A stretch of DNA of 63,055 bases, counting the filler, from Reticulomyxa filosa (taxonomy: Eukaryota; Protista; Foraminifera), in the NCBI GenBank assembly GCA_000512085.1. It is 19 parts of 19 records of this genome, joined end to end, with 100 filler letters (N's around TTAATTAATTAA, not from the genome) between each part and the next. Parts side by side here need not be neighbours in the genome. Positions count along the whole stretch, not along the records: positions 5,503 to 14,053 come from ASPP01005357.1; 18 more parts are not named here. One strand, 5' to 3'. A program made the position numbers and the translations under genes. The number at the start of each line of letters is the position of its first letter. Within the stretch, counting starts at the first letter, position 1. The notes beneath the pieces are model-generated. The model was given only the letters and a program-made list of their open reading frames with translations. It had not been told where the DNA came from and made no database searches. Of the stretch, positions 626 through 49,456 are shown one piece after another.

Positions 626-1183
626 TATGTTAAGGTCGTTTTGCGTCTGTTTTATTTTTAAATTATGGCTTTACTGTTTTTTGGACACGTGGCTAGTCAA
701 TTCTTCTCAAAGATTATTGTTGTTCACAAGTAACACTATTTTTCACTTTAACTGGATAGCCAAAAGATGTTTTCATCAATTATTGCGTTTCATTGCAACA
801 AAAGATTTTCACACTACAGTGCTGCCCTACGCCAAGAAAGCGGGAAAACATAACCGCAAACTTACAACTCCATCAGTACAAACATATTGCCATCTATTGA
901 TCCTCTTGTCTATTTTTTAATATTTAATTAGTAATTTATGGTACTTTGTCAATTTCAGGATTAAATAAATCCAACGGGTGTAATAAGTTATATACTGAAA
1001 ATGCCAAAGATACATGGAGAAGAAAAAAAAAACGAACGTTAAAAAATATGGCCCAATAATTGGAGTGCATATGTTTATATAACTTCTGCCACAAGTAAAA
1101 AAGTATTCTTTTTTTCTGCGTTGTCTTCGTCCCAAAAAAAAAACTTTGAAATAGTCCCAAGGATAAGTGGGCTCATCTAAGCA

Positions 1184-1634
1184 ATGTTGCATCCCTTTTC
1201 CAGTGTTACGCCGAGTGACCATCACATGAAATCGACCTCTTCAAATAGAAGCAAAGGAAAGCAAATGGATCAGACAAGCCTTTCCACAGCACCAAAAAAA
1301 GTGGCAATGGTTCGGCGTAACACAGGGTACTACAACAACAGCAACAACGGCCAGCCATCGGACATAATATCACAAAAGGAAGAGCAATTGGACAGCAGTA
1401 GTGGCAGTGCTTACCAGTGGAAAAAGAGGAGTAGCTTAACCGCCGGGGGTAGCACATGTGACAGCGAGTCATTTACAGTGACGTGCTCGAACGGCAATGA
1501 AAGCCATCACCACCATGATAATGAAGCGAGACTGCTGGACCATGATAGCGATATGGATTCCGAAAAAGAAATGGAAACCTACCCATTTCTGGCAAAGCAC
1601 AGACACACTTTGACCGACGTTATAATTTCAAACG
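1184..1634 (+). CDS. Hypothetical Ser-rich protein, 5' part (runs off contig)
   Basis: Open frame to the contig end, GC-richer than its flanks and divergent from the 113-625 ORF. No family recognised. Confidence 0.5.
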
Positions 1635-1734
1635 NNNNNNNNNNNNNNNNNNNNNNNNNNNNNNNNNNNNNNNNNNNNTTAATTAATTAANNNNNNNNNN
1701 NNNNNNNNNNNNNNNNNNNNNNNNNNNNNNNNNN
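1635..1734. other. Artificial contig-joining linker (first of 18)
   Basis: 44 N + TTAATTAATTAA (stops in all six frames) + 44 N. The same 100-bp block starts at 1635, 5403, 14054, 17640, 23270, 25842, 31129, 34913, 39548, 43542, 45013, 46154, 47947, 52826, 53940, 56728, 60511 and 61617. Confidence 0.98.
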
Positions 1735-1812
1735 AAAAAAAAAAAAAAAAAAATTATTAATTTTTTAAAAAAAATTTTTTTTTTTTTTTTTTAACAAAAA
1801 AGTATTGCACAG

Positions 1813-3516
1813 TTTTCACGCAAAGACGCAGAAAAGATGAGCGAGTACGACGACTTCCTAAGTCATTTCCGTGATTTGTTACAGCCGCTGCTGGACGATG
1901 CACCCCCTCCAGGAGTGTTGAGCTACAACATTGACGGACTTGGATACGACGTCGATGGGACAAAGAAGAGCGAGAAGAAAGGGAGACGTCTGAAGGAAAT
2001 CTACAAAATGCACGCGTCGCAGTATTACCAATTGTGGCAACAAATGCGAAAGAATAAAGACCGATTGCCCGACTTTTACGAGTTTATGACGGCGCCGGCG
2101 AATGTGATACTGAATCGATGGTTCGAAAGCGACATTCTGAAAACCACGCTAGCCACCGACGCCGTGATCGGCAGCATTCTCTCGCCCGCAGATCCTGGGT
2201 CGGCCTATGTGCTGTTGCATCATGTCATGGGCGAAGTCGAAGGACGACAAGGCGTATGGGCATACTGCCAAGGAGGCATGGGCTCCATCACAAAGGCCTT
2301 GGCTCAATGCGCAAAAGATCACGGCGCACAGATCCTCACCAACGCCACCGTCGATCGCGTCCTGCTGCACAAACACTTGTCCACTCCTCCAAAGATCAAA
2401 GGCGTTGTCATGAAAGATGGCACGCCTATCTATGCCAAAGTCGTCCTAAGCAATGCCACGCCCTATCATACCTTTGTTGAATTGCTGTCCTCTAAAAATA
2501 CCACGTATACATATCTATATATGTGTACATATATGATTTTTTTTTTTTTTTTTTTTTTTTATAAATATGCAAATAAATCTATTTCAATGGACTAAACAGA
2601 GACGACGTAGACGATGCGGCCATTCGTGCACTAATCCCACAGTCGTATTTGCAGACCATTGAACACAGCGATTATGCTTGTGGCGCGTTCAAAATCAATT
2701 GCGTGGTCGATCAACTGCCCAATTTCCAGTGCATTCCCAATGAGTCGTACAAGGCAAGCGATGGTCAGCTGCGGTTCAAAGTCGGGGATCAACACAAAGG
2801 CACTGTCCACTTTGAGTCACGCTTGACCGAACTCGAGGATGCCGCTAAAGAAGCCAAACGTGGCATTCCTGCCACTAGGTTGCGTTTTTGTTTTGTTTTC
2901 ATTAGAGAAGAAGAAGAAGAGAGGAGGGGGTCGTTATTGCATGTTTGTGCATGCTGTACCTTTTTAACGTATACGTACATATATGTGTGTGCGCATAATT
3001 TTTTGAAACAATATACTGTACATTTGGATTCACAGACCTGTGATCGAAATGACAATTCCCAGTAGTTTGGATGACACATTGGTGCCGAAAGACAAACTTG
3101 GACAACACCACATTGTTCAATTGTTTGTGCAGTATGCGCCGTACGAATTGAACAAAGAAGAGTTGGGGGTATCCAGCTGGGACGATGGAGACTTCAAACA
3201 GCGATTTGCTGATCGCGTGTTCCGCATCATTGATGAATTTGCTCCCAATTTTAGTCAATCTGTGTTGCATCGCGATTTGTTGTCGCCAAGAGATTTGGAG
3301 CGGGTATTTGGCCTTCACAAAGGCAATATCTTCCATGGCGCCTTGTCTTTGAACCAAATTGGCTATTGTCGACCTGTTTCAAAGTACAGCAGCTATAGAA
3401 CACCTATCGAAGGCCTATATTTGTGTGGAAGCGGTACACACCCTGGAGGTGGTGTCATGGGAGCACCCGGAAAAAACTGTGCAAAGCATGTGCTGTTTGA
3501 TTTAAAAATGTACTGA
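1813..3516 (+). CDS. PYROXD2: PYROXD2-like FAD-dependent oxidoreductase (phytoene dehydrogenase family), 5'-truncated, 3 exons seen
   Basis: Exons 1813-2504, 2600-2878 and 3036-3516 splice in frame across GT-AG introns. Motifs: LKTTLATDAVIG, GSAYVLLHHVMGE, WAYCQGGMG, RPVIEMTIPSSLD, GNIFHGAL, YRTPIEGLYLCGSGTHPGGGVMGAPG. Confidence 0.9.
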
Positions 3517-4521
3517 TCCCATATATACATATATGCATCTAGCGCGTGTGGTAGGCGTTTCTTTTGTAACAATAGCCACGAAATACAAAAATGACCTTTG
3601 TATACAACATTACTGATCAACGGTCTTGTGTAAGTGATAATAATTTTTTTCGTGGGTAACATTGTACTCATTTTTACCTTGTAAAAAAAAATAAAGAATA
3701 AAATAAAACTACATACACAAAAAATGTGTAACTTTTTCAATAAACTCATATGGAGAAGGAAGATCATTTATTTTGGAAGTTTTTTAAATTAATTGTCATC
3801 ATGGATTGTTCAAAAACAAGTAACAAAAAATGGTAATACATCGACAAAGCATCCACTTTATCGCAAACACTGAGCTAGTAGTTGTGTTGAAACAAAAGTC
3901 TACTTTTATAACTAAGAAGATGATGTTCTTATGAAAAATGACTATCTGTATGTCGTTCTCTTTCCTTTAAACCATGAAACAGTAGTTATTGCACATTTCT
4001 GATCGACCAAAAAATCCAGCAAAAAGCGAAAATCTAGGACTTGGTGTCAAAGGCACAATATTTTAATAGAAGCGGTACTAATTTTTTCAAAAACAAGACT
4101 TTGCATCGAGACGAATAACAAAATTAGTTGAATAAACGCTTCAAAAACAAAAACTATCATATAGAAAAAAAATGCTACAAGTAAACTTTAACATAAAGAA
4201 TATCATAATGCAAACGAATGTTTTTCAAATTTAATTAAAAAAAATATAATAATCACTTCAAACTTTTCAGAAAAAGTTACTTAAGAAAATTTTTGTTTGA
4301 TTTTGTTGTAGATACATAGAACAAATCACATAATATATTTCATCTATGTTGTAATATCTTATCTTTTACATTTATTTGAAAAGATATACATTCAATTTTT
4401 TTAGCTGACTTTTATAGTATGCATTTTTTTATAACAAAAATTTTACACTATCAAACTGTAAAGAAAAAGTAATCTATTTAACAAACACATATACTTGTGT
4501 TTAAAAGAAGCTTTTATGTGT

Positions 4522-5121
4522 TTAATACTTGGTGGTATCGCCACTGGCCTTTATCACAGCATGAATGAACTTAAGCATTGAAGCAATAAGCATATCACAC
4601 AAATAACTTTCAATATAGTCAATTGATTGCTAAACTCATCAAATAGATTTTCATGAACTATGCTTTCTGTTGATATTCATGTTTGTTTGAACTATTTTTT
4701 CCAATTTTGGACAGTCATCACGCCAACCTTGAAGTGCTTTGCCAATTTTTGCATAGACTTTAAACCCAAAAGCGTTTGCATAGATATTCCCTTTGTAAAC
4801 TAGTCAAAGTGTTTCACCAGAATGCTTTTTACTTTCTTCTGTGTTATTTTGCGTTAAATACTTTAATATTGGTCAGTATAATTAATTTTAAACTTTTTAT
4901 TTAGTAAGATAGTTTTTTTGAAGATGAATTTTCAAACTCCTGAGGAAAAAGAAGGATGCAGAACTTTTCAAATAAATGCAAGAGAAAATATATTATGTAA
5001 TTTGTTCTATGTATCCACAAAATTATTTTATTTTAGCTCTTTTCAATAAAAATATAAAAGTCAAATACTAAAAAAGCAAACATTTTTTTGGGTGTACTGT
5101 TTTTTTTTGCAAACTACTGTA
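4522..5121 (-). mobile_element. Internally deleted Tc1/mariner (IS630-Tc1) relic with one terminal inverted repeat
   Basis: The minus strand reads an HTH-like KLAKHFKVGVMTVQNWKK*FKQT..NINRKHSS joined to a Tc1-type C-terminus LIASMLKFIHAVIKASGDTTKY*. An upstream end reads TA|CAGTAGTTTGCAAAAAAAAACAG on the minus strand (5121-5097). Confidence 0.65.
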
Positions 5122-5196
5122 CTGGATAATTCAGTTTGCAAGTTTAGTGTTGGTGTGTATTGCATATTTAAAAAATTGCATTTTGTTTTTTTTTAG

Positions 5197-5220
5197 TACA
5201 GTAGGTTGCAAAAAAAACTG
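5197..5220 (+). repeat. Tc1-like terminal inverted repeat, second copy
   Basis: TA|CAGTAGGTTGCAAAAAAAACTG is near-identical to the reverse complement of 5097-5121 and to 31038-31061. Confidence 0.6.
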
Positions 5221-6035
5221 ATAAACTTCAATAAAAGAATATAATTTTTCTCAAAAACTAAGAAAGATACAAGACTAATTTTTTTTTTAAACATATCTAC
5301 GTGACTTGAAGATTACTAAAAAATAAACAAAAATATTATAAGATATCATGGTGCAAATGCAAGTGCAAACTATTTAAAGCTTCACAAAATTTTAAAAAAT
5401 CANNNNNNNNNNNNNNNNNNNNNNNNNNNNNNNNNNNNNNNNNNNNTTAATTAATTAANNNNNNNNNNNNNNNNNNNNNNNNNNNNNNNNNNNNNNNNNN
5501 NNATTTATTTAAAAAAAGACAAACAAACAAATGAAAAATAAAAATGTCAAGGTTTGTTGTAAATAACAATATATTTAAAAAAGATATTATTCTTGTCTTA
5601 CAACCTTGTTTTTTTTTTGAATGGTATCTTCTCTGGTGTTATCAAAGGTTAACACCAGAGTTGTAAGACATTCAGTCTTTATAAATATATAAAAACTTAA
5701 CTAGTTTGAGAAAAGGAAATAAACAAACAAAAAACAAAACAACAAAGCAGTCCCTTTTTTTAAATATATTTTTCAATAAAATGAAAAAACAAATTTTGTA
5801 ACTCAAATATGTAATTCTTACAAAAATTAGCTGAAATATTTACAGTTTATTTAATTATATCTTTTTTAAAAAGATTTTGTCATTTAACCAGAATTTGTAA
5901 TTGTTTATTTATTTTCATATACAATACAAACTTAAAAAAAATATTTAATCATGCCATCCAAGTCAATACTTGAAAAAAATATTTAAAACAATGTGTTTGG
6001 CTCTTTTTTCAATATTTCTGCAACAATGATGTACA

Positions 6036-7519
6036 GTGAGTTCTGAATTTTCAACAAGTGAAAACAAAAAGAAAAAGTTGAAACTTTTGGGCGACCAGAC
6101 ACTGGTGCTAAGAGAACAGAAATACCTTTATTACGACGAAACGCATCAAAGTAATTATACAACAAGTTTTAGAGCTAACCCTGCTGGGAATGGGAATATT
6201 CTACCTGTCGCATCAGAAAAAAATATAAACTACAATAATATTTATCTTCAAAAACATAAGCTCACTGGAGGAATGAATTCGTTTGGAATACAAACGTTGA
6301 AGCATGAAAAAGACATACAAAAAATTGAAACTACGAACTTGGTAATAGTCAAGCTAAGCTATGTGTATTTTCACGTGGTCTTTTTATTGATTAGCGCAAC
6401 ACCAAAAAACATATCAATTACAAATTTGAGAAAAAGATGCCAACATATGATATAAAGACAGAGAAAGAGCTAAAATTAGTTTTGAAAAATTGGATGACTT
6501 TATGTTCAATCGAATCCGGATGGATTGATGAATTTGACAAAATTATTTCGCGATATGTTGAGTGTTCTAGTCACATTGACTATCGTGTTACATTTTTTTT
6601 TGACAACAATGATTGCAAACACCAAATATTTTAACAGGCCAAATACTTTAAGTTTTTAAAGACTTTTCAAGGGCCTTCTGGATGTGCTTGTGGTGTAAAA
6701 TTTTCACTGGATGGCAAGCAAATTGTTTCCGCGACCAATGACAAAAAAATAAGGATATGGGATGTAGCCTCAGGAAATGAATTACAAATATTGAAAGGAC
6801 ATCCACTTCGTGCCACTTATGTACAATTTTCGCCAAATGCTAAAATGGTCGTTTCATGTTCGGGAGACAAGACAGTCATATTGTGGGATGTTGTTTCAGG
6901 GCAAGAGATCAAAAGATTAGAGGGACATTCCGGTAATGTAAGAAGTGTTCAATTTTCACCTGATGGTGACACTGTTGTATCATGTTCATTTGATAATTCA
7001 ATTCGATTGTGGGATGTTGATTCTGGAAAAGAAATTAAAAAAATGGAGGGGCATTCCCATTTTGTAAATGATGTAAAATTTTCAAAAGATGGGAAAATGC
7101 TTGTTTCATCCTCATTAGATAAAACAATTGGAATATGGGATGTGAAATCAGGTGAAAGAATAAAACATTTGAAAGGGCATTCAGGTGTTGTGTGGAAAGC
7201 ACAATTTTCGCCAGATAGTGTCTCCATTGTATCTTGTTCAAAGGATAAAACAATTCGAATATGGGATGTGGCATCAGGGAAAGAAGTACGTAGATTTGAT
7301 GGATATCCAAGCTGGGTAAGTGATATTCAATTTTCGCCAGATGGTCAAACTATTGCATGTTCAATGGACAAAACAATTTTATTGGTTCTTATGAAAACAG
7401 GATTAGAAATACAAAAATTGGAAGGTCATTTTGATAGTATACTTGGCATAGATTTTTCGCCAAATGGTAAAACCATTGTATCTTCATCTGATGATGGAAC
7501 TATTCGATTGTGGGGATGA
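6036..7519 (+). CDS. WD40-repeat protein with an N-terminal W-box exon and about 7 WD repeats
   Basis: Exons ~6036-6341, 6458-6556 and 6638-7519 are phase 0 and in frame. Repeated GH...V.FSPDG..IVS.S.D.TIRLWD units, ending TIRLWG*. The true start is uncertain. Confidence 0.85.
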
Positions 7520-8425: not shown

Positions 8426-9750
8426 TTCAAAAACTTTTTAATTTTTCTAAATAGTAATTAGGATAAAGATCTAAATCTCTATCAACAAACAAATAAGAAT
8501 AATTTGGAATATTTTGATATTGGCTTATAATCGATCATATGTTATTCCATTCAAAGCAGTTACAAGCTCACTCATAATTGAATTTGACAATGGGCATACA
8601 AATTCTTTTGGAATATCTTGTTGTTTAGAATCTTTATCAGAATCAATATCAATGATTGGATATTTTGAACAAATTTCATTAAATGCATTATAAATATTAC
8701 AAGCTTGAATAAACATATCAAAACGAAATAAACCCATCAAACTGTTTTTTGATATCTTTGATAAAGCCATTCCATCAATTTTTTTATTTTGAGCAATCAC
8801 ATTGTATTGATTTATTTATTATTTGTTAGTTTCAAAGTATATTCAATAAAGCTTGCAATATCTTTTGAATCCCATGTATTCCACTTTTTTCCTAACTTAG
8901 TCCACTTTTTTCCATCCAATTTTGACTTTCTTCTAATCTTTTTTTAATTGGATATTGAATGCATTAAATTCTTTTAATAAATTGTTACTAATTTTATAAA
9001 TTTCGTTTATTGTGTATTTTTTTGCTCAATTTGTTGTGTCATACTGTTCAATCCTCCATAAAAATATATAATCATAAAGATCTATAAATGAATACATATT
9101 GGCATCCTTTAGGGTATGACAAATTGATAATTTTTCATAATCAAATATTTTATTTTGTTCATCATATTTCATTAATAATCCTGTGTTACGACAAAACAAT
9201 ATAAAACGATTGATTAATTTTTCATCATCCCTTGTAAATGGCACAAAACAATGATGTTGAAGTCCAAATATGTGTTTTCTCTTGGAATTGTATTATTTTT
9301 AATTCCATTCAATGATTTCATCGTTTTCAAATCAATCGCTTCAATATTTTGTGGATGATAAGCTATCAACAATAAATCATTATTTATTCCACCAATCAAT
9401 CCACGTGCTCTTAACTCATTATCAATTTCCCATACACTTTTATACCTAATCTAAAATGTTTGTTTTATTTGACCTTTACCTTGTCCTCCAAAAGATAACA
9501 AATAAATTTCATTGGGATTTGTTTGTGAATGATTCAATTGTATAACACAATGTCCATCAAACTTAATATCATTTGGATAAGAGCAGACGTACTTATACTG
9601 CATCATTCTAGTGTGATACGAGTAACAGTCGTTAGTTTCATAGCCTCCACAAAGAAGAAGTTCATGTTTGAGAAAAATACATTGAGAAGCTGCAAAAGAT
9701 TTTGGTAATTCAGGCAAAATTTCAAAGATGTCGTTGACTTGAACGGACAT
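8426..9750 (-). pseudogene. Kelch-like / SAM-like / U-box fusion pseudogene
   Basis: Kelch-like N-terminus (ELLLCGGYETNDCYSYH, LLSFGGQG). The frame is broken into fragments 9451-9750, 9214-9399, 9026-9244 and 8525-8800. The last fragment has a SAM-like KIDGMALSKISK followed by the U-box IPKEFVCPLSNSIMSELVTALNGITYDR, interrupted by a stop. Confidence 0.75.
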
Positions 9751-11472
9751 GTTAGATGAGCATTTTTTTCTTTTTTTAAAGTGTCTCGACAATCCCCCCT
9801 TGGTCTTGTTTTTTTCAAAATATTAGTTCTTTTGTTTTGAAATTTTTTTTGGTATTAATTTATTGTGATTTTTGATAATTAGAGAATACTCTCAATTTGA
9901 GGCCGCTTGAGTGGAGAGTTTTGATTTTGGATTTATCGTGGGCAAGGGGAGGTAGAATAATTGAATTGTAAAAAAAAGTCAATGATGTCTCTTCTTTTTA
10001 ATGTTTAGTACTTTGAAAAAAAGCACATTTTTTTGTGTGTCTTTTGAATGTAACACAAACTGAATGTGTAGATTTGTTTTCAGACTCACAACTGTTTTTC
10101 AAAGAAAGTATGCAAGATATTTGCAGAATTATATACATTTTATTGGGAGATTGACGTTCTTTGTAGATATTTTTGGTAAGTTTTTAATTAGTTGATTTAA
10201 TTGATTATTTATTGTCTGTGTTATAAAATAAAAACAAAACATTTTTTGTTGTTTTAAAATTAGTATGTCGTTATTCATTATAATTACTTCCTTAATTTTT
10301 TTATTCTAGTTATCTTTCTTCTTTTAAACAAAAAACGACACTACGTGGAATAATTTCAAAAGATTTGCTCGTGTTTTTTGTTGGTTTTTTTTTTTTAGTG
10401 TAATTAAATTTATAAATCTTCGCCTAAATTTTCTTTCACGTTGGAGCTGCAGAGATTTTTTTACACAGCTAAAAACATTACTAAACTAGATTGCAAAAGT
10501 CTTCAGTCTTAGAAAGTGATCGAATAAAGAAAAGCTTCACCATAACGAAAAGTATAGTGGCAAAATGTTGTGATCTGAATAAAAGGTTTTGCAAAATTGC
10601 ATAAAATCCTGCTTCTGTAAAATTGAATCATTTATTCAAACTTCAACTTTTTGAGTTTTATTGTACATATATCATTTATCTATATTATCACGTTTTCATT
10701 AAAGTTTCCAATGAAAAGGACTGGCATTAGGACTTTAGAATGATCTAAACTTGTCCATTTCGAATGCGCAATCCTGAGGAAATTTTTTTGAAAACGTATT
10801 GCCAATGATTGGTGCTTTTGTTAGATTAGGATGTAAACCGTAAATGAATGAAACATACGTTTTAACTAACAACACTGATTCAATTTTAGAATTTTTTAAT
10901 TCTAAAAATCTTTTCTTATGTTATTAATAGTGTGTTTTCTTTTGATTTACCATTGGTCGAGTTTTCATTTTTGGAGACTAAGTCAGTCAATCGTAACACC
11001 AAATTTAGTTCATTGTAATGTTTCATAAAAGAAAGTTCAATTATGACATTATCTAAGCTTTTCGTTCCGACCACAAATTGAAGGTTTCAAGTTGGTATAA
11101 GGCAGTATCTAAAATGACCACAACAATTTCCAATTTTTTATTTTTAATCAAAAATATATTGAGAATTTAATGGGACATCTAAATGATGGACAAGTGTCAG
11201 TGATATTAAAAGTTCATTAAAAAAATCTTATTACAAATAGTGAAAAAGCATAGTCATTAACACATTTTATTGTGAACAACAAAGTGAAAACATTGTTTGA
11301 AGAGATTGAATTACGTTCACTGAAGCCAAAAAATGTATGTTCAAGGTGTCAAAAAAAAAAAAAAAAGGGGGAGGCTAAGAAAAAATCTGAAAAACATCGA
11401 TGAAAGTAGACCCACCCTCATAAATTCTCTCAAGTAATATTAAAACAGCATTTCTTAACAAAAAAATCACAA

Positions 11473-13974
11473 TCATGCCACGCGAACAGGAGTTTCGTCC
11501 ATGTCTTTGATGGATGGTTTGTTTTCAGTACCAGCCCGGGTTGGAGGTGGAGCAACGTGTATTTGTTCTGATTTTGGCGCCAAACTGAAGCGGATTGACC
11601 TAGCACGCAATTCGAAGCCTTTCTTTTCTTTTGCCCATGGATAAACTTTTTCGCCAATATCAAATGGTTGCCACTGCAAGATTAAGGCCTGCTCGTGATC
11701 AGTCAAAGGATGTTCCAAGGCAGTCACATTCACATTATCAAATCTAGTGTATCCATACATAACCATATCCCCCGCCCCCAACAAAAGCATTAAAAAAAAG
11801 TGTTGTCAAAATTGCACATTGAAAATATAAGATATTTCTTCAACTGTATGCGATTGAATCCTTTTTCATCAATATAATCATAAAGTTTATCTTCGAGAAG
11901 GTTTTCACCGTTGATAAATTTTAAACGAGCCAAAATGTACATGTGGGCTTGAAAAACGTTGTGGAAGATGCGATCGATTCCGATTAACTTTAACAAATGA
12001 CTACGCTTAATCAGCTTCATGACAGGATATTTGACATCGGTCAGTATTAACGCGACATTGTTTTGGTCTAAATGCTTGTGTGCATTGTCCAACGCGAGCA
12101 CGCCGCTGCTGTCCATATCATTGATAGCGCTGCAATCCAAGATCAAAAAGTACAATTGCTTGGCGCTTCTTCGATGTCGTTCCACGACCACTTGGATCGC
12201 GCGTTTGAAGTAGTTGACATTGCCAAAGTATAAGGCCCCATCGAAGCGGAACACGACGATACCCGGTGTTGTGATGGCGTTGGGCCACGACGTGATACTG
12301 CCATACATTGTCGTATGGGCAATTCGACCCACAATGGCACAATGAGGTTTACTCGATCTTTGAACCAAAAACACAATGCTAAGAGCAAATCCAACCTCGA
12401 TGCCCTCAAAGATTCCCCACAATGTGGTGCAAAGCAACGTCACTGCGACAATGTACGAGTCTTTTGTGTCAATGCTGAATATCTCTTTGATCTTTTCGTA
12501 AGGGAACATTCCCACGCACGCGTTCCATACAATGCCTGCCAGCACACTACGTGGTAGCCAGTAGAGCAAGTTTGGACACCCGCTTATTAATATCATCACA
12601 CTAATCACCACCGCCGCGCAAATCCAGTTGAACACCAATGTCTTTGCGCCCGCTTGGTCTATTTTATGTGTAATGTGATACACATATACGCATTATTATA
12701 TATTGATAGGAGGAAGCACAATCACGCATTTTCGACATTTTTAAAAAAAACACACACACAAACACATTCAATTCAAACATCTCTCTTGTTCTTCTTCTTA
12801 TACAGTGTACATATCACATCTCGAGATGTGAATAGTTGCCTTACCTGCAAGTGGTGCGTGAGTGAACACACCACCGGCCGGGAAAATGCCAAACAAGCTA
12901 CCGATTAAATTAATAATTCCATGGGCGTACATTTCGCGTGTTGGGATCAAATCATATTCGTGTTTCAATGCATAATTGGCAGCAACTTTTTTTTTTTTTT
13001 TTTTATTGAAAAAATGCATTTATTTTTAATTCAAACGATCAAAAAAAAAAAAAAAAAACATTACATGAACAACACTTATAAACAAAAAATATGTTACAAC
13101 AAAAACAAAAAGGGGGGAAATTGTATACGTATTTTTGGAATTTTGAAGAATAAAAAACAAAGAAATGTAAAAAAAAAAAACAGAATTAAGAATTCTTTTT
13201 CGTTAACCGGCAATGTGTGTGGTAAAGATGACGACAGCAGCAGACAAAGCTTGCAAAAGAAAAATGTTAGGATGACGATCGACCAAAGAAAAATCCAAAT
13301 CGATTTTGGTGGGGAATCGGATGACAATTTCTCCAATAATTTCAGGCGCATGCAAAGTGCCCTTGTTCCAGTTTCCTTTGGTGGCATGATCCAAAAAGCG
13401 GCCGCCAAAGTTGATGAGAGTGAAAAACACCACCAGGATCAGGGTCATGGGTGTGCTTTTCATGATCTTGCTGTACTTCCAATTGGGGAAGTATTTGGGG
13501 ATACCTTTGAACGTCATCAAGGTGGTAAAGGTGGCAACACAGCACGCAAATGCCTTCCAATTGAAAGAATCCCAATGTTGCAACAGCTTCACATTGTCGA
13601 TCCACGTGGTGGTGTGTGGATTCAATGCAAACGCATACTTGAGTTGCGAAGCTGCGATTTGCAAGGCCGCTCCTCCGGTAAATCCCAACAACACCGGATA
13701 CGCCAGAAACGATGCAATAAATCCGATGCCAAACACTGCCATTCCAAAGTAAAACACGCCCGTCATAAAGGCCAAGGTTTTCACACCGTCGCGTACGCGT
13801 CCGTCAACGACGCCGCCGGGAAGTTGGTCATCACTGCGAGAGTCAAGATTGTTGACATCGAACTGCATCCGAATGTCACATGGCGAGACGTGCCAAACAA
13901 TGGGTACAAACACATCCCAATGCATGCCGTATATAAGCCAAGCGCCGGACTCACACCGATCACACCCGTATAAG
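11473..13974 (-). CDS. SulP/SLC26 anion transporter with STAS domain, 5'-truncated, multi-exon
   Basis: Sulfate-transporter motifs GLYTACIG..LYPLFGTSRHVTFG, PVLLGFTGGAALQIAASQLK and LPRSVLAGIV, followed by a STAS region (PGIVVFRFDGALYFGN..LILDCSAINDMDSSG). One frameshift near 13785. Confidence 0.9.
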
Positions 13975-48997: not shown

Positions 48998-49456
48998 ATG
49001 GACGTTACTACTAACGAAAAAAGAAATGAAATACTGCTGTTGGTAAGTTTTCCTTTAAAATCTTTTCAGTACATTTTGTGTTATTACTAACAAAAACACA
49101 GTTAGGACAAGTGCAATTGATAATTCAAAACTGGCTTCGCATTTTAAATATTAAATTAGGATGGATCAATGATTTTGACAGATTGGTTACAAAATACGTT
49201 AAATTTTTTTTTTTTTTGTCCTGAATTGAATAAAATGCTCATTGATTAACATATATATGTGAAGTATTTTTCAGATGATCAAGCCATTGTGTCTTGTTCA
49301 TTGGATACTACGATTCGTTTGTGGGATGTGAAATCAGAAAATGAAATACAAAAGTTAGAAGGACACTCAAATTGGATTACAAGTATTGATGTTTCACCAA
49401 ATGATGATATAATTGCATCATGTTCTTATGATAGAACAATCAGAATATGTGGATAA
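48998..49456 (+). pseudogene. Internally deleted W-box/WD40 gene
   Basis: A 15-codon exon (48998-49042) and a W-box exon (49102-49197), then only the last two WD repeats, ending RTIRICG*. Confidence 0.75.

What the first reader, a model, noticed from the sequence alone, without database searches (positions are those of the whole stretch)
6342..6556. A portable 'W-box' exon shared by WD40 and Kelch propeller genes: candidate lineage-specific F-box/SOCS-box-like adaptor
Seen: four copies of one 32-33-aa motif. They are TEKELKLVLKNWMTLCSIESGWIDEFDKIISRY (6458-6556,+), LGQVQLIIQNWLRILNIKLGWINDFDRLVTKY (49102-49197,+), SEEDIQMIIQYWIRIFHIKFGWINDLNVLVINY (50402-50304,-) and SNIETKFIIEYWARKLKIRLGWIDGFNKIIIKY (44513-44415,-). 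Each starts its own phase-0 exon, and each upstream exon ends in the same junction TTG|GTAA. In the three WD40 genes the exon ends right after the Tyr codon and precedes the propeller; in the Kelch gene it is the last exon. Known: F-box, SOCS/BC-box and DCAF H-box motifs are short helical tags that dock variable propeller receptors on cullin-RING ligases. Inference: this is an unnamed docking box, spread by exon shuffling over a large, fast-evolving substrate-receptor repertoire, possibly for defence or prey/pathogen recognition.
Basis: partly seen in the sequence, partly recalled or inferred. Interest (0 to 1): 0.8.

Follow-up and report, generated by a model that had tools for sequence, protein, structure and literature searches.

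The report
Lineage-specific helical box beside propellers
A 33-residue helical motif with its own small exon recurs in about 200 genes of the foraminiferan Reticulomyxa filosa, always next to a WD40 or Kelch propeller; it is real and apparently undescribed, but nothing yet ties it to ubiquitin ligases.

Summary
The piece is a Reticulomyxa filosa contig, and its gene is ETO30695.1. Window 6458-6556 encodes a 33-aa box flanked by AG and GT splice signals, lying directly before a seven-blade WD40 propeller.

A profile of 11 copies found 196 representative proteins (E <= 0.001) among 1.84 billion. All 20 whose names I looked up are R. filosa. Ten further genomic copies on six contigs show the same exon design:
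- WD40-linked copies end at Tyr|GT.
- Kelch-only copies run four codons further to a true stop.

There is no Pfam or PDB sequence match, so no F-box, SOCS box or LisH was detected.

One new point: the box often lies between a Kelch propeller and a WD40 propeller in one protein. Box sequences cluster by their partner domain, which suggests few shuffling events rather than free portability.

AlphaFold2 models both propellers confidently. It leaves the box helical at pLDDT about 50 and does not fix the orientation of the two propellers (pTM 0.50).

My best reading is an autonomous association or neck module that folds on a partner. The ligase-adaptor idea is untested and has no direct support. 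Interest is moderate.

The parts
6036..6341 (+). Upstream coding exon of the WD40 gene (ETO30695.1). It ends in TTG (Leu) and contains the subfamily's 'GGMN' motif about 24 residues before its end. The true start codon is uncertain.
   Evidence: Paralogs P0047, P0062, P0143, P0161, P0208, P0217 and P0237 share ..GGMN.. x14-24 ..L directly before the box. No Pfam domain.
6342..6457 (+). Intron 1 (116 nt, GTAATA...AAAG). The NCBI model instead splices 6342-6394 and adds 21 residues.
   Evidence: Paralogs go straight from Leu to the box, which favours the longer intron. No RNA data were available.
6458..6556 (+). The box exon: 99 nt, 33 codons, phase 0 at both ends. Predicted helix - short turn around the invariant Gly-Trp - helix.
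   Evidence: W12, G21 and W22 are invariant in the 11-copy alignment and were preset by the pattern that selected the 144 copies; among those 144, I23 is 97%, F26 96%, K28 86% and Y33 94%.
6557..6637 (+). Intron 2 (81 nt, GTTGAG...AACAG), in frame but with a TAA at 6632-6634. The NCBI model reads 10 extra residues into it.
   Evidence: Paralogs continue Tyr then A-K-Y/N-F-K-L-L-K, matching the exon that starts at 6638.
6638..7519 (+). WD40 propeller exon, seven 42-residue repeats, stop at 7517-7519.
   Evidence: Pfam WD40 E 9.4e-77 with 7 stretches. 45-52% identity to named R. filosa WD40 proteins. 126-nt tandem signal.

Best explanation
The box is a Reticulomyxa-specific module of 33-34 residues, built from two amphipathic helical segments around an invariant Gly-Trp. 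It is encoded by a dedicated phase-0/phase-0 exon.

It forms the 'neck' directly N-terminal to a greatly expanded clan of HET-E-like WD40 propellers. In roughly one copy in eight it also lies directly C-terminal to a family-specific Kelch propeller. Three architectures result: Kelch-box-WD40 two-propeller proteins, Kelch-box proteins that end there, and box-WD40 proteins with varied N-termini.

I infer that it is an autonomous protein-protein association element that becomes ordered only on a partner. The partner is most likely another box (self- or cross-pairing of propeller proteins) or one common docking protein. I do not think it is an integral part of either propeller.

Shown: its reality, copy number, exon design, architectures, lineage restriction, helical prediction, and lack of match to known boxes. 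Inferred: the association function and the identity of the partner.
For: - Recurrence: 196 profile hits; 154 copies in the 152 proteins analysed.
- Lineage: 20 of 20 named hits are R. filosa, and the metagenome scan found none.
- Exon design: confirmed on 10 further genomic copies.
- Architectures: Kelch-box-end (P0129, P0207, P0256) and Kelch-box-WD40 (P0191, P0200, P0231, P0255); counts.
- Autonomy: the box keeps its invariant residues without a WD40 in cis (Kelch-only genes) and without a Kelch (WD40-only genes), while the flanking N-terminal regions cannot be aligned between subfamilies.
- Fusion logic: split and fused forms have near-identical boxes, up to 82%.
- AlphaFold2: the box is helical but has pLDDT about 50 in two contexts, while the propellers reach 80-98. 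pTM is 0.50 for the two-propeller protein, so no fixed intramolecular packing is predicted.
- Sequence pattern: the hydrophobic residues follow a 3-4 spacing along both helical segments (column table).
- Some members carry a charged segment of about 50 residues, which looks like a coiled coil by eye, just before the box.
Against: - There is no direct evidence of any interaction.
- Low pLDDT may only reflect shallow alignments (10 and 25 rows).
- The two models disagree: a hairpin, one long helix.
- Pooled pN/pS of the box exon is only about 0.54, and close Kelch-type pairs show pN about equal to pS, so constraint outside the invariant positions is weak.
- Many gene models are fragments, so architecture counts are lower bounds and some 'fusions' could be merged gene models.
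Confidence: 0.45

Rival explanations
1. One reading: the box docks propeller substrate receptors onto a cullin-RING or other E3 ligase adaptor, like an F-box, SOCS box or DCAF H-box.
For: The architecture is analogous. A short helical box sits next to a variable propeller, N-terminal to WD40 (as in F-box or H-box proteins) and C-terminal to Kelch (as the SOCS box is in WSB/ASB proteins; this comparison is from my own knowledge). Kelch-box proteins have no other adaptor domain. The family is large and variable. The conserved, low-pLDDT helical segment fits a docking motif. A fragment of a U-box lies near a member of the same Kelch family in the window, but this is weak and may be coincidence.
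Against: No sequence similarity to F-box, SOCS, BTB or LisH models even at E <= 10, and none to any PDB chain. A box between two propellers in one chain is not the usual layout of such receptors. No adaptor binding was tested.
Confidence: 0.15
2. A purely structural linker: an intramolecular helical neck or cap of this WD40 clan, inherited with the propeller and with no partner of its own.
For: At least 80 of 154 copies are followed directly by WD40, and the first propeller strand begins 2-5 residues after the Tyr. Box sequences co-diverge with their neighbouring domains.
Against: At least 8 Kelch-only proteins keep an intact box with no WD40 in cis, and 3 of 3 checked at DNA level have a real stop codon. 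AlphaFold2 does not pack the box on either propeller.
Confidence: 0.2
3. A hitch-hiking relic: the box looks conserved only because the family expanded recently, and many copies are pseudogenes.
For: pN is about equal to pS among the closest Kelch-type pairs. The assembly holds many truncated or degenerate copies, for example the Kelch relic in the window.
Against: Copies that are only 27-58% identical overall keep the same seven positions invariant, while adjacent N-terminal sequence is unalignable. Exon boundaries are conserved across subfamilies.
Confidence: 0.1

Closest known systems
F-box (e.g. F-box/WD40 proteins such as Cdc4, beta-TrCP; F-box/Kelch proteins of plants)
   Same: A short helical module next to a WD40 or Kelch propeller, in a large variable family.
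   Different: No profile match. The F-box is about 45 residues with three helices and is N-terminal; this box has 33 residues, one or two helices, and can lie C-terminal to Kelch or between two propellers. Skp1 binding is untested.
SOCS box / BC box (e.g. WD40-SOCS proteins WSB1/2)
   Same: A small helical box at the C-terminal side of a repeat domain, as in the Kelch-box proteins.
   Different: No profile match, and no recognisable BC-box or Cul-box pattern. Most copies are N-terminal to the propeller.
LisH (with CTLH) in WDR26/Gid7 (WD40) and muskelin (Kelch)
   Same: About 33 residues, predicted helix-turn-helix with a conserved Gly at the turn, found beside both WD40 and Kelch propellers. 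LisH dimerises, which is the function I favour here.
   Different: No Pfam LisH hit even at E <= 10. The loop is longer, the conserved residues differ (Trp, Trp, Phe, Tyr), and there is no CTLH. The resemblance comes from my own knowledge of LisH, not from a test.
DCAF H-box / helix-loop-helix of DDB1-binding WD40 receptors
   Same: A helical motif directly N-terminal to a WD40 propeller that is ordered only when bound.
   Different: There is no sequence model to test against. DCAFs have no Kelch partner. DDB1 binding is untested.
HET-E / NWD-type WD40 repeat families of fungi
   Same: The propeller itself: highly regular 42-residue WD repeats in a strongly expanded family. One member has a weak NACHT match before the box (P0226).
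   Different: Those families have no such box, and the NACHT match is below Pfam's threshold.

Membership tests
F-box (PF00646 / PF12937) | Sequence match to the family profile | tested here: not met
   hmmscan of the window copy and of 11 copies at E <= 10 gave no F-box hit.
F-box (PF00646 / PF12937) | Binds Skp1 | not testable with these tools
   No multimer modelling or experiment was available.
SOCS box | Sequence match to the family profile (BC box plus Cul box) | tested here: not met
   No hit, and no PDB chain matched the profile at E <= 10.
LisH (PF08513) | Sequence match to the family profile | tested here: not met
   No hit.
LisH (PF08513) | Two-helix hairpin that dimerises into a four-helix bundle | tested here: inconclusive
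   AlphaFold2 gives a helix-loop-helix in P0072 but one continuous helix in P0191, both at pLDDT about 50. Dimerisation was not testable.
WD40 repeat propeller (PF00400) | Seven WD repeats matching the profile (applies to the gene, not the box) | tested here: met
   E 9.4e-77 with 7 stretches in window 6638-7516.
Kelch propeller (PF01344 and relatives) | Kelch repeats in the partner proteins that carry the box at their C-terminal side | tested here: met
   Above Pfam's own cut-off for at least one Kelch model in six proteins: P0129 (Kelch_1 44.1 bits, cut-off 20.1), P0207, P0241, P0191:1-660, P0255:1-256 and P0200. P0200 was shown only by the precomputed Kelch hit in that call. P0256 and P0231 match below the cut-off.
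New box family (this report) | Profile of alignment A1: W12, G21, W22, I23, F26, K28, Y33 with hydrophobic 3-4 spacing | tested here: met
   The window's own protein P0124 scores 61.4 bits, E 4.3e-12, in the whole library.

The most novel reading that the evidence does not exclude
The box is a foraminiferal counterpart of the F-box: a new, sequence-unrelated docking module. It would plug about 200 fast-diversifying WD40 and Kelch propeller receptors into one common effector (an E3 ligase adaptor, or another hub), or let Kelch and WD40 receptors pair combinatorially. Either way it would give this giant syncytial cell a lineage-specific recognition repertoire.
Probability: 0.15. Interest if true: 0.75.

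Novelty: new variant of a known kind. Interest (0 to 1): 0.45.

Why it matters
Short helical boxes beside propellers (F-box, SOCS box, LisH, H-box) organise large receptor families in well-studied eukaryotes. Rhizaria are almost unexplored in this respect.

Here one free-living foraminiferan has about 200 genes sharing a sequence-novel box with a cassette-like exon, including an unusual Kelch-box-WD40 two-propeller architecture. If the box proves to be a docking or pairing module, it would be an independent invention of the 'box plus variable propeller' design, and a handle for finding what these expanded propellers recognise.

There is also a practical point. Many R. filosa gene models read through the intron after the box, so the family is systematically mis-annotated.

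Tried and rejected
- **Own genome:** The genome search 'own' holds no genome for this window.
- **Sequencing runs:** none was listed, so read laying was not used and splice sites have no RNA support.
- **Word-index search limited to the box region of P0072:** only 2 candidates, uninformative.
- **Metagenome scan with the box profile:** 210 pattern matches, none confirmed. The query is short, so power is low.
- **ESM Atlas look-alikes of the box:** only foraminiferan WD40 clusters and generic helical hairpins.
- **Idea that the window's exon 1 ('GGMN' region) is a decayed last Kelch blade:** rejected. An HMM of the Kelch-to-box linker scores about 0 bits on all GGMN-type N-termini.
- **A second, degenerate box near the Kelch relic in the window:** none found by a six-frame HMM search.
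- **pN/pS of the 99-nt exon from 10 genomic copies:** 0.54 pooled, too noisy to decide.
- **Literature:** six searches of the held library found no description of the motif. The R. filosa genome paper is not held.
- **Joined spliced model:** Exons were searched by reference, and the full-length protein used was the database's own model (P0124).
- **Profile-profile comparison (HHpred style) with F-box, LisH or SOCS alignments:** not run, because no tool-derived alignments of those families were at hand.
- **Fold search:** not used for the box, because stretches with pLDDT below 60 are dropped.

Full report
**What the piece is**

The WD40 exon (6638-7516) finds its best named relatives, at 45-52% identity, in Reticulomyxa filosa. 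The profile search then returned a 527-aa protein carrying the window's box letter for letter. This is P0124 = ETO30695.1, on a contig of 8551 bases. That contig matches the piece exactly: record ASPP01005357.1, locus L007. So the window is a naked freshwater foraminiferan contig. Non-coding DNA has about 21-31% G+C.

**The observation**

From the sequence itself:
- The upstream exon ends TTG at 6339-6341 and the intron begins GTAATA at 6342.
- An AG at 6456-6457 precedes the box.
- The Tyr codon is 6554-6556 and is followed by GTTGAG.
- An AG at 6636-6637 precedes the WD40 exon.

The upstream exon and the box are in different frames, so splicing is required. The box exon is 99 nt with phase 0 at both ends.

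NCBI's model uses other sites. It adds 21 residues before the box and 10 after it. No sequencing run was listed, so this rests on homology only.

**Recurrence**

Ten of twelve named R. filosa WD40 hits carry the box directly before the propeller. Their alignment (A1) has seven invariant positions: W12, G21, W22, I23, F26, K28 and Y33.

A profile of A1, scored against 1.84 billion representative proteins, gave 196 hits at E <= 0.001 and 38 at E <= 1e-10. All 20 whose names I looked up are R. filosa. A metagenome scan confirmed none. The 46 weakest hits were not listed, so a relative in another organism cannot be fully excluded.

Pfam gave nothing for the window copy, nor for any of 11 copies at E <= 10 apart from three unrelated single hits. 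No PDB chain matched the profile. Searches of the held literature found no description.

**Exon design in other copies**

I fetched six further contigs and located ten more boxes.
- **Start.** Each begins at an AG acceptor, or within four codons of one. In at least five cases there are in-frame stops immediately upstream, so it is a separate exon.
- **End in WD40-linked copies.** They end Tyr|GT (GTTAAGT, GTTAGTT, GTTCATT). One subfamily runs two codons further before GTATAT.
- **End in Kelch-only genes.** All three copies run four codons past the Tyr or Phe to a genuine stop, with no donor.
- **Upstream exon.** In the clearest cases it ends Leu|GTAA or GTTT; two copies end in Lys or Ile, and two could not be placed.
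- **Annotation error.** Many deposited proteins continue after the Tyr with Val plus hydrophobic junk. This is read-through of that intron. It is a systematic annotation error that independently marks the intron position.

**Architectures**

In the 152 proteins analysed there are 154 boxes.
- At least 80 are followed by recognisable WD repeats.
- 20 are preceded by the last blade and linker of one family-specific Kelch propeller. Of these, 8 end there and 7 continue into WD40.
- Pfam confirms Kelch before the box, and WD40 after it, in P0191, P0200, P0231 and P0255.
- Other N-terminal contexts are short or low-complexity regions, a conserved 'GGMN' motif (the window's subfamily), a charged segment of about 50 residues, and one weak NACHT match.

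So the box is not confined to one architecture. It is, however, almost always the neck of a WD40 propeller.

On a tree of the 33 columns, the Kelch/non-Kelch label changes only 3 times, against a mean of 16.3 (minimum 11) when labels are shuffled. Kelch-only boxes are up to 82% identical to those of Kelch-box-WD40 proteins. The tree is short and the rows are related. With that caveat, the pattern indicates a few fusion or truncation events followed by family expansion, not free shuffling.

**Structure**

With a 10-row alignment, AlphaFold2 models P0072 with helix 11-30, a loop at 31-35 (around the invariant Gly-Trp) and helix 36-48. These have pLDDT about 50, while the propeller exceeds 90.

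With 25 rows, the complete Kelch-box-WD40 unit of P0191 gives two confident propellers. The box appears as one long helix at pLDDT 47-50, and pTM is only 0.50. No fixed packing of the box, or of the two propellers, is predicted.

The column table shows hydrophobic residues at a 3-4 spacing along both halves. The box is the best-conserved segment outside the propellers yet is modelled with the least confidence. That is what is expected of a segment that becomes ordered on a partner, though shallow alignments could also explain it.

**Interpretation**

Three facts argue that the box is autonomous:
- It persists intact in Kelch-only proteins (no WD40 in cis).
- It persists intact in WD40-only proteins (no Kelch).
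- It joins the two in fused proteins with nearly identical box sequences.

The fused and split forms suggest that the separate Kelch and WD40 proteins work together. An amphipathic helical hairpin is a plausible pairing or docking element. I commit to that reading at 0.45.

It has architectural analogy but no sequence support and no test, so I put it at 0.15. A purely intramolecular neck gets 0.2. It is disfavoured by the Kelch-only genes and by the models. A hitch-hiking relic gets 0.1. It is disfavoured by invariant positions shared across copies that are only 27-58% identical, next to unalignable flanks. pN/pS is uninformative (0.54 pooled).

**Comparison with known boxes**

It works like F-box, SOCS-box, LisH or H-box modules in layout. 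It fails the only membership feature I could test, the profile match, for F-box, SOCS and LisH. I therefore file it as a sequence-novel variant of the 'short helical box beside a propeller' theme.

The name 'W-box' is already used for the WRKY DNA element and should be avoided.

- I did not search a joined spliced model. Exons were used by reference, and the database's own protein was used where a full chain was needed.
- No reads tool was used, because no run was listed.

Noticed in passing
window 9026-9792 (-): A truncated member of the same Kelch family that elsewhere carries the box. It is 52% identical to the N-terminus of P0207, and a later block matches too. It is annotated only as a 157-aa hypothetical protein, has no box downstream, and is probably a decayed copy. 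It lies tail-to-tail with the box-WD40 gene.
   Followed up: partly
window 8525-8610 (-): An unannotated ORF ending in a good N-terminal half of a U-box (Pfam U-box positions 1-28 of 73, E 0.0016). It is cut by a stop right after T-Y-D-R-L, with no GT donor nearby. Fragment or pseudogene; any link to the Kelch relic upstream is unknown.
   Followed up: partly
window 11790-13925 (-): A SulP/STAS sulfate-permease gene with 39-50% G+C in a contig whose other parts have 21-31%. It is split into two gene models by the annotators, with long poly-A/T runs in the gaps. I did not examine whether this is codon bias or foreign origin.
   Followed up: no
window 11476-11790 (-): A 105-codon ORF directly downstream of the STAS exon, in the G+C-richer zone, with no Pfam match. 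It may be a further exon of the permease gene.
   Followed up: partly
window 5544-6557 (+), NCBI model ETO30695.1: The deposited gene model seems mis-spliced around the box (21 + 10 extra residues), and its first small exons in AT-rich DNA look doubtful. Across the family, many models read through the intron after the box Tyr.
   Followed up: partly
L001 (ASPP01020642.1) 758-6869: A box-WD40 gene lies head-to-head with a Kelch-box gene about 1 kb away, followed by a second Kelch-box gene in tandem. L003 carries two box-WD40 genes. Family members cluster in the genome.
   Followed up: partly
window 6262-6273 and paralogs: A conserved K-L-C/Y-G-G-M-N motif lies 14-24 residues before the box in the window's subfamily (8 proteins). 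It is not related to the Kelch linker, and its function is unknown.
   Followed up: partly
P0020, P0203, P0239 (N-termini): One box-WD40 subfamily has long Asn/Arg/Tyr/Gln-rich low-complexity N-termini before the box.
   Followed up: no
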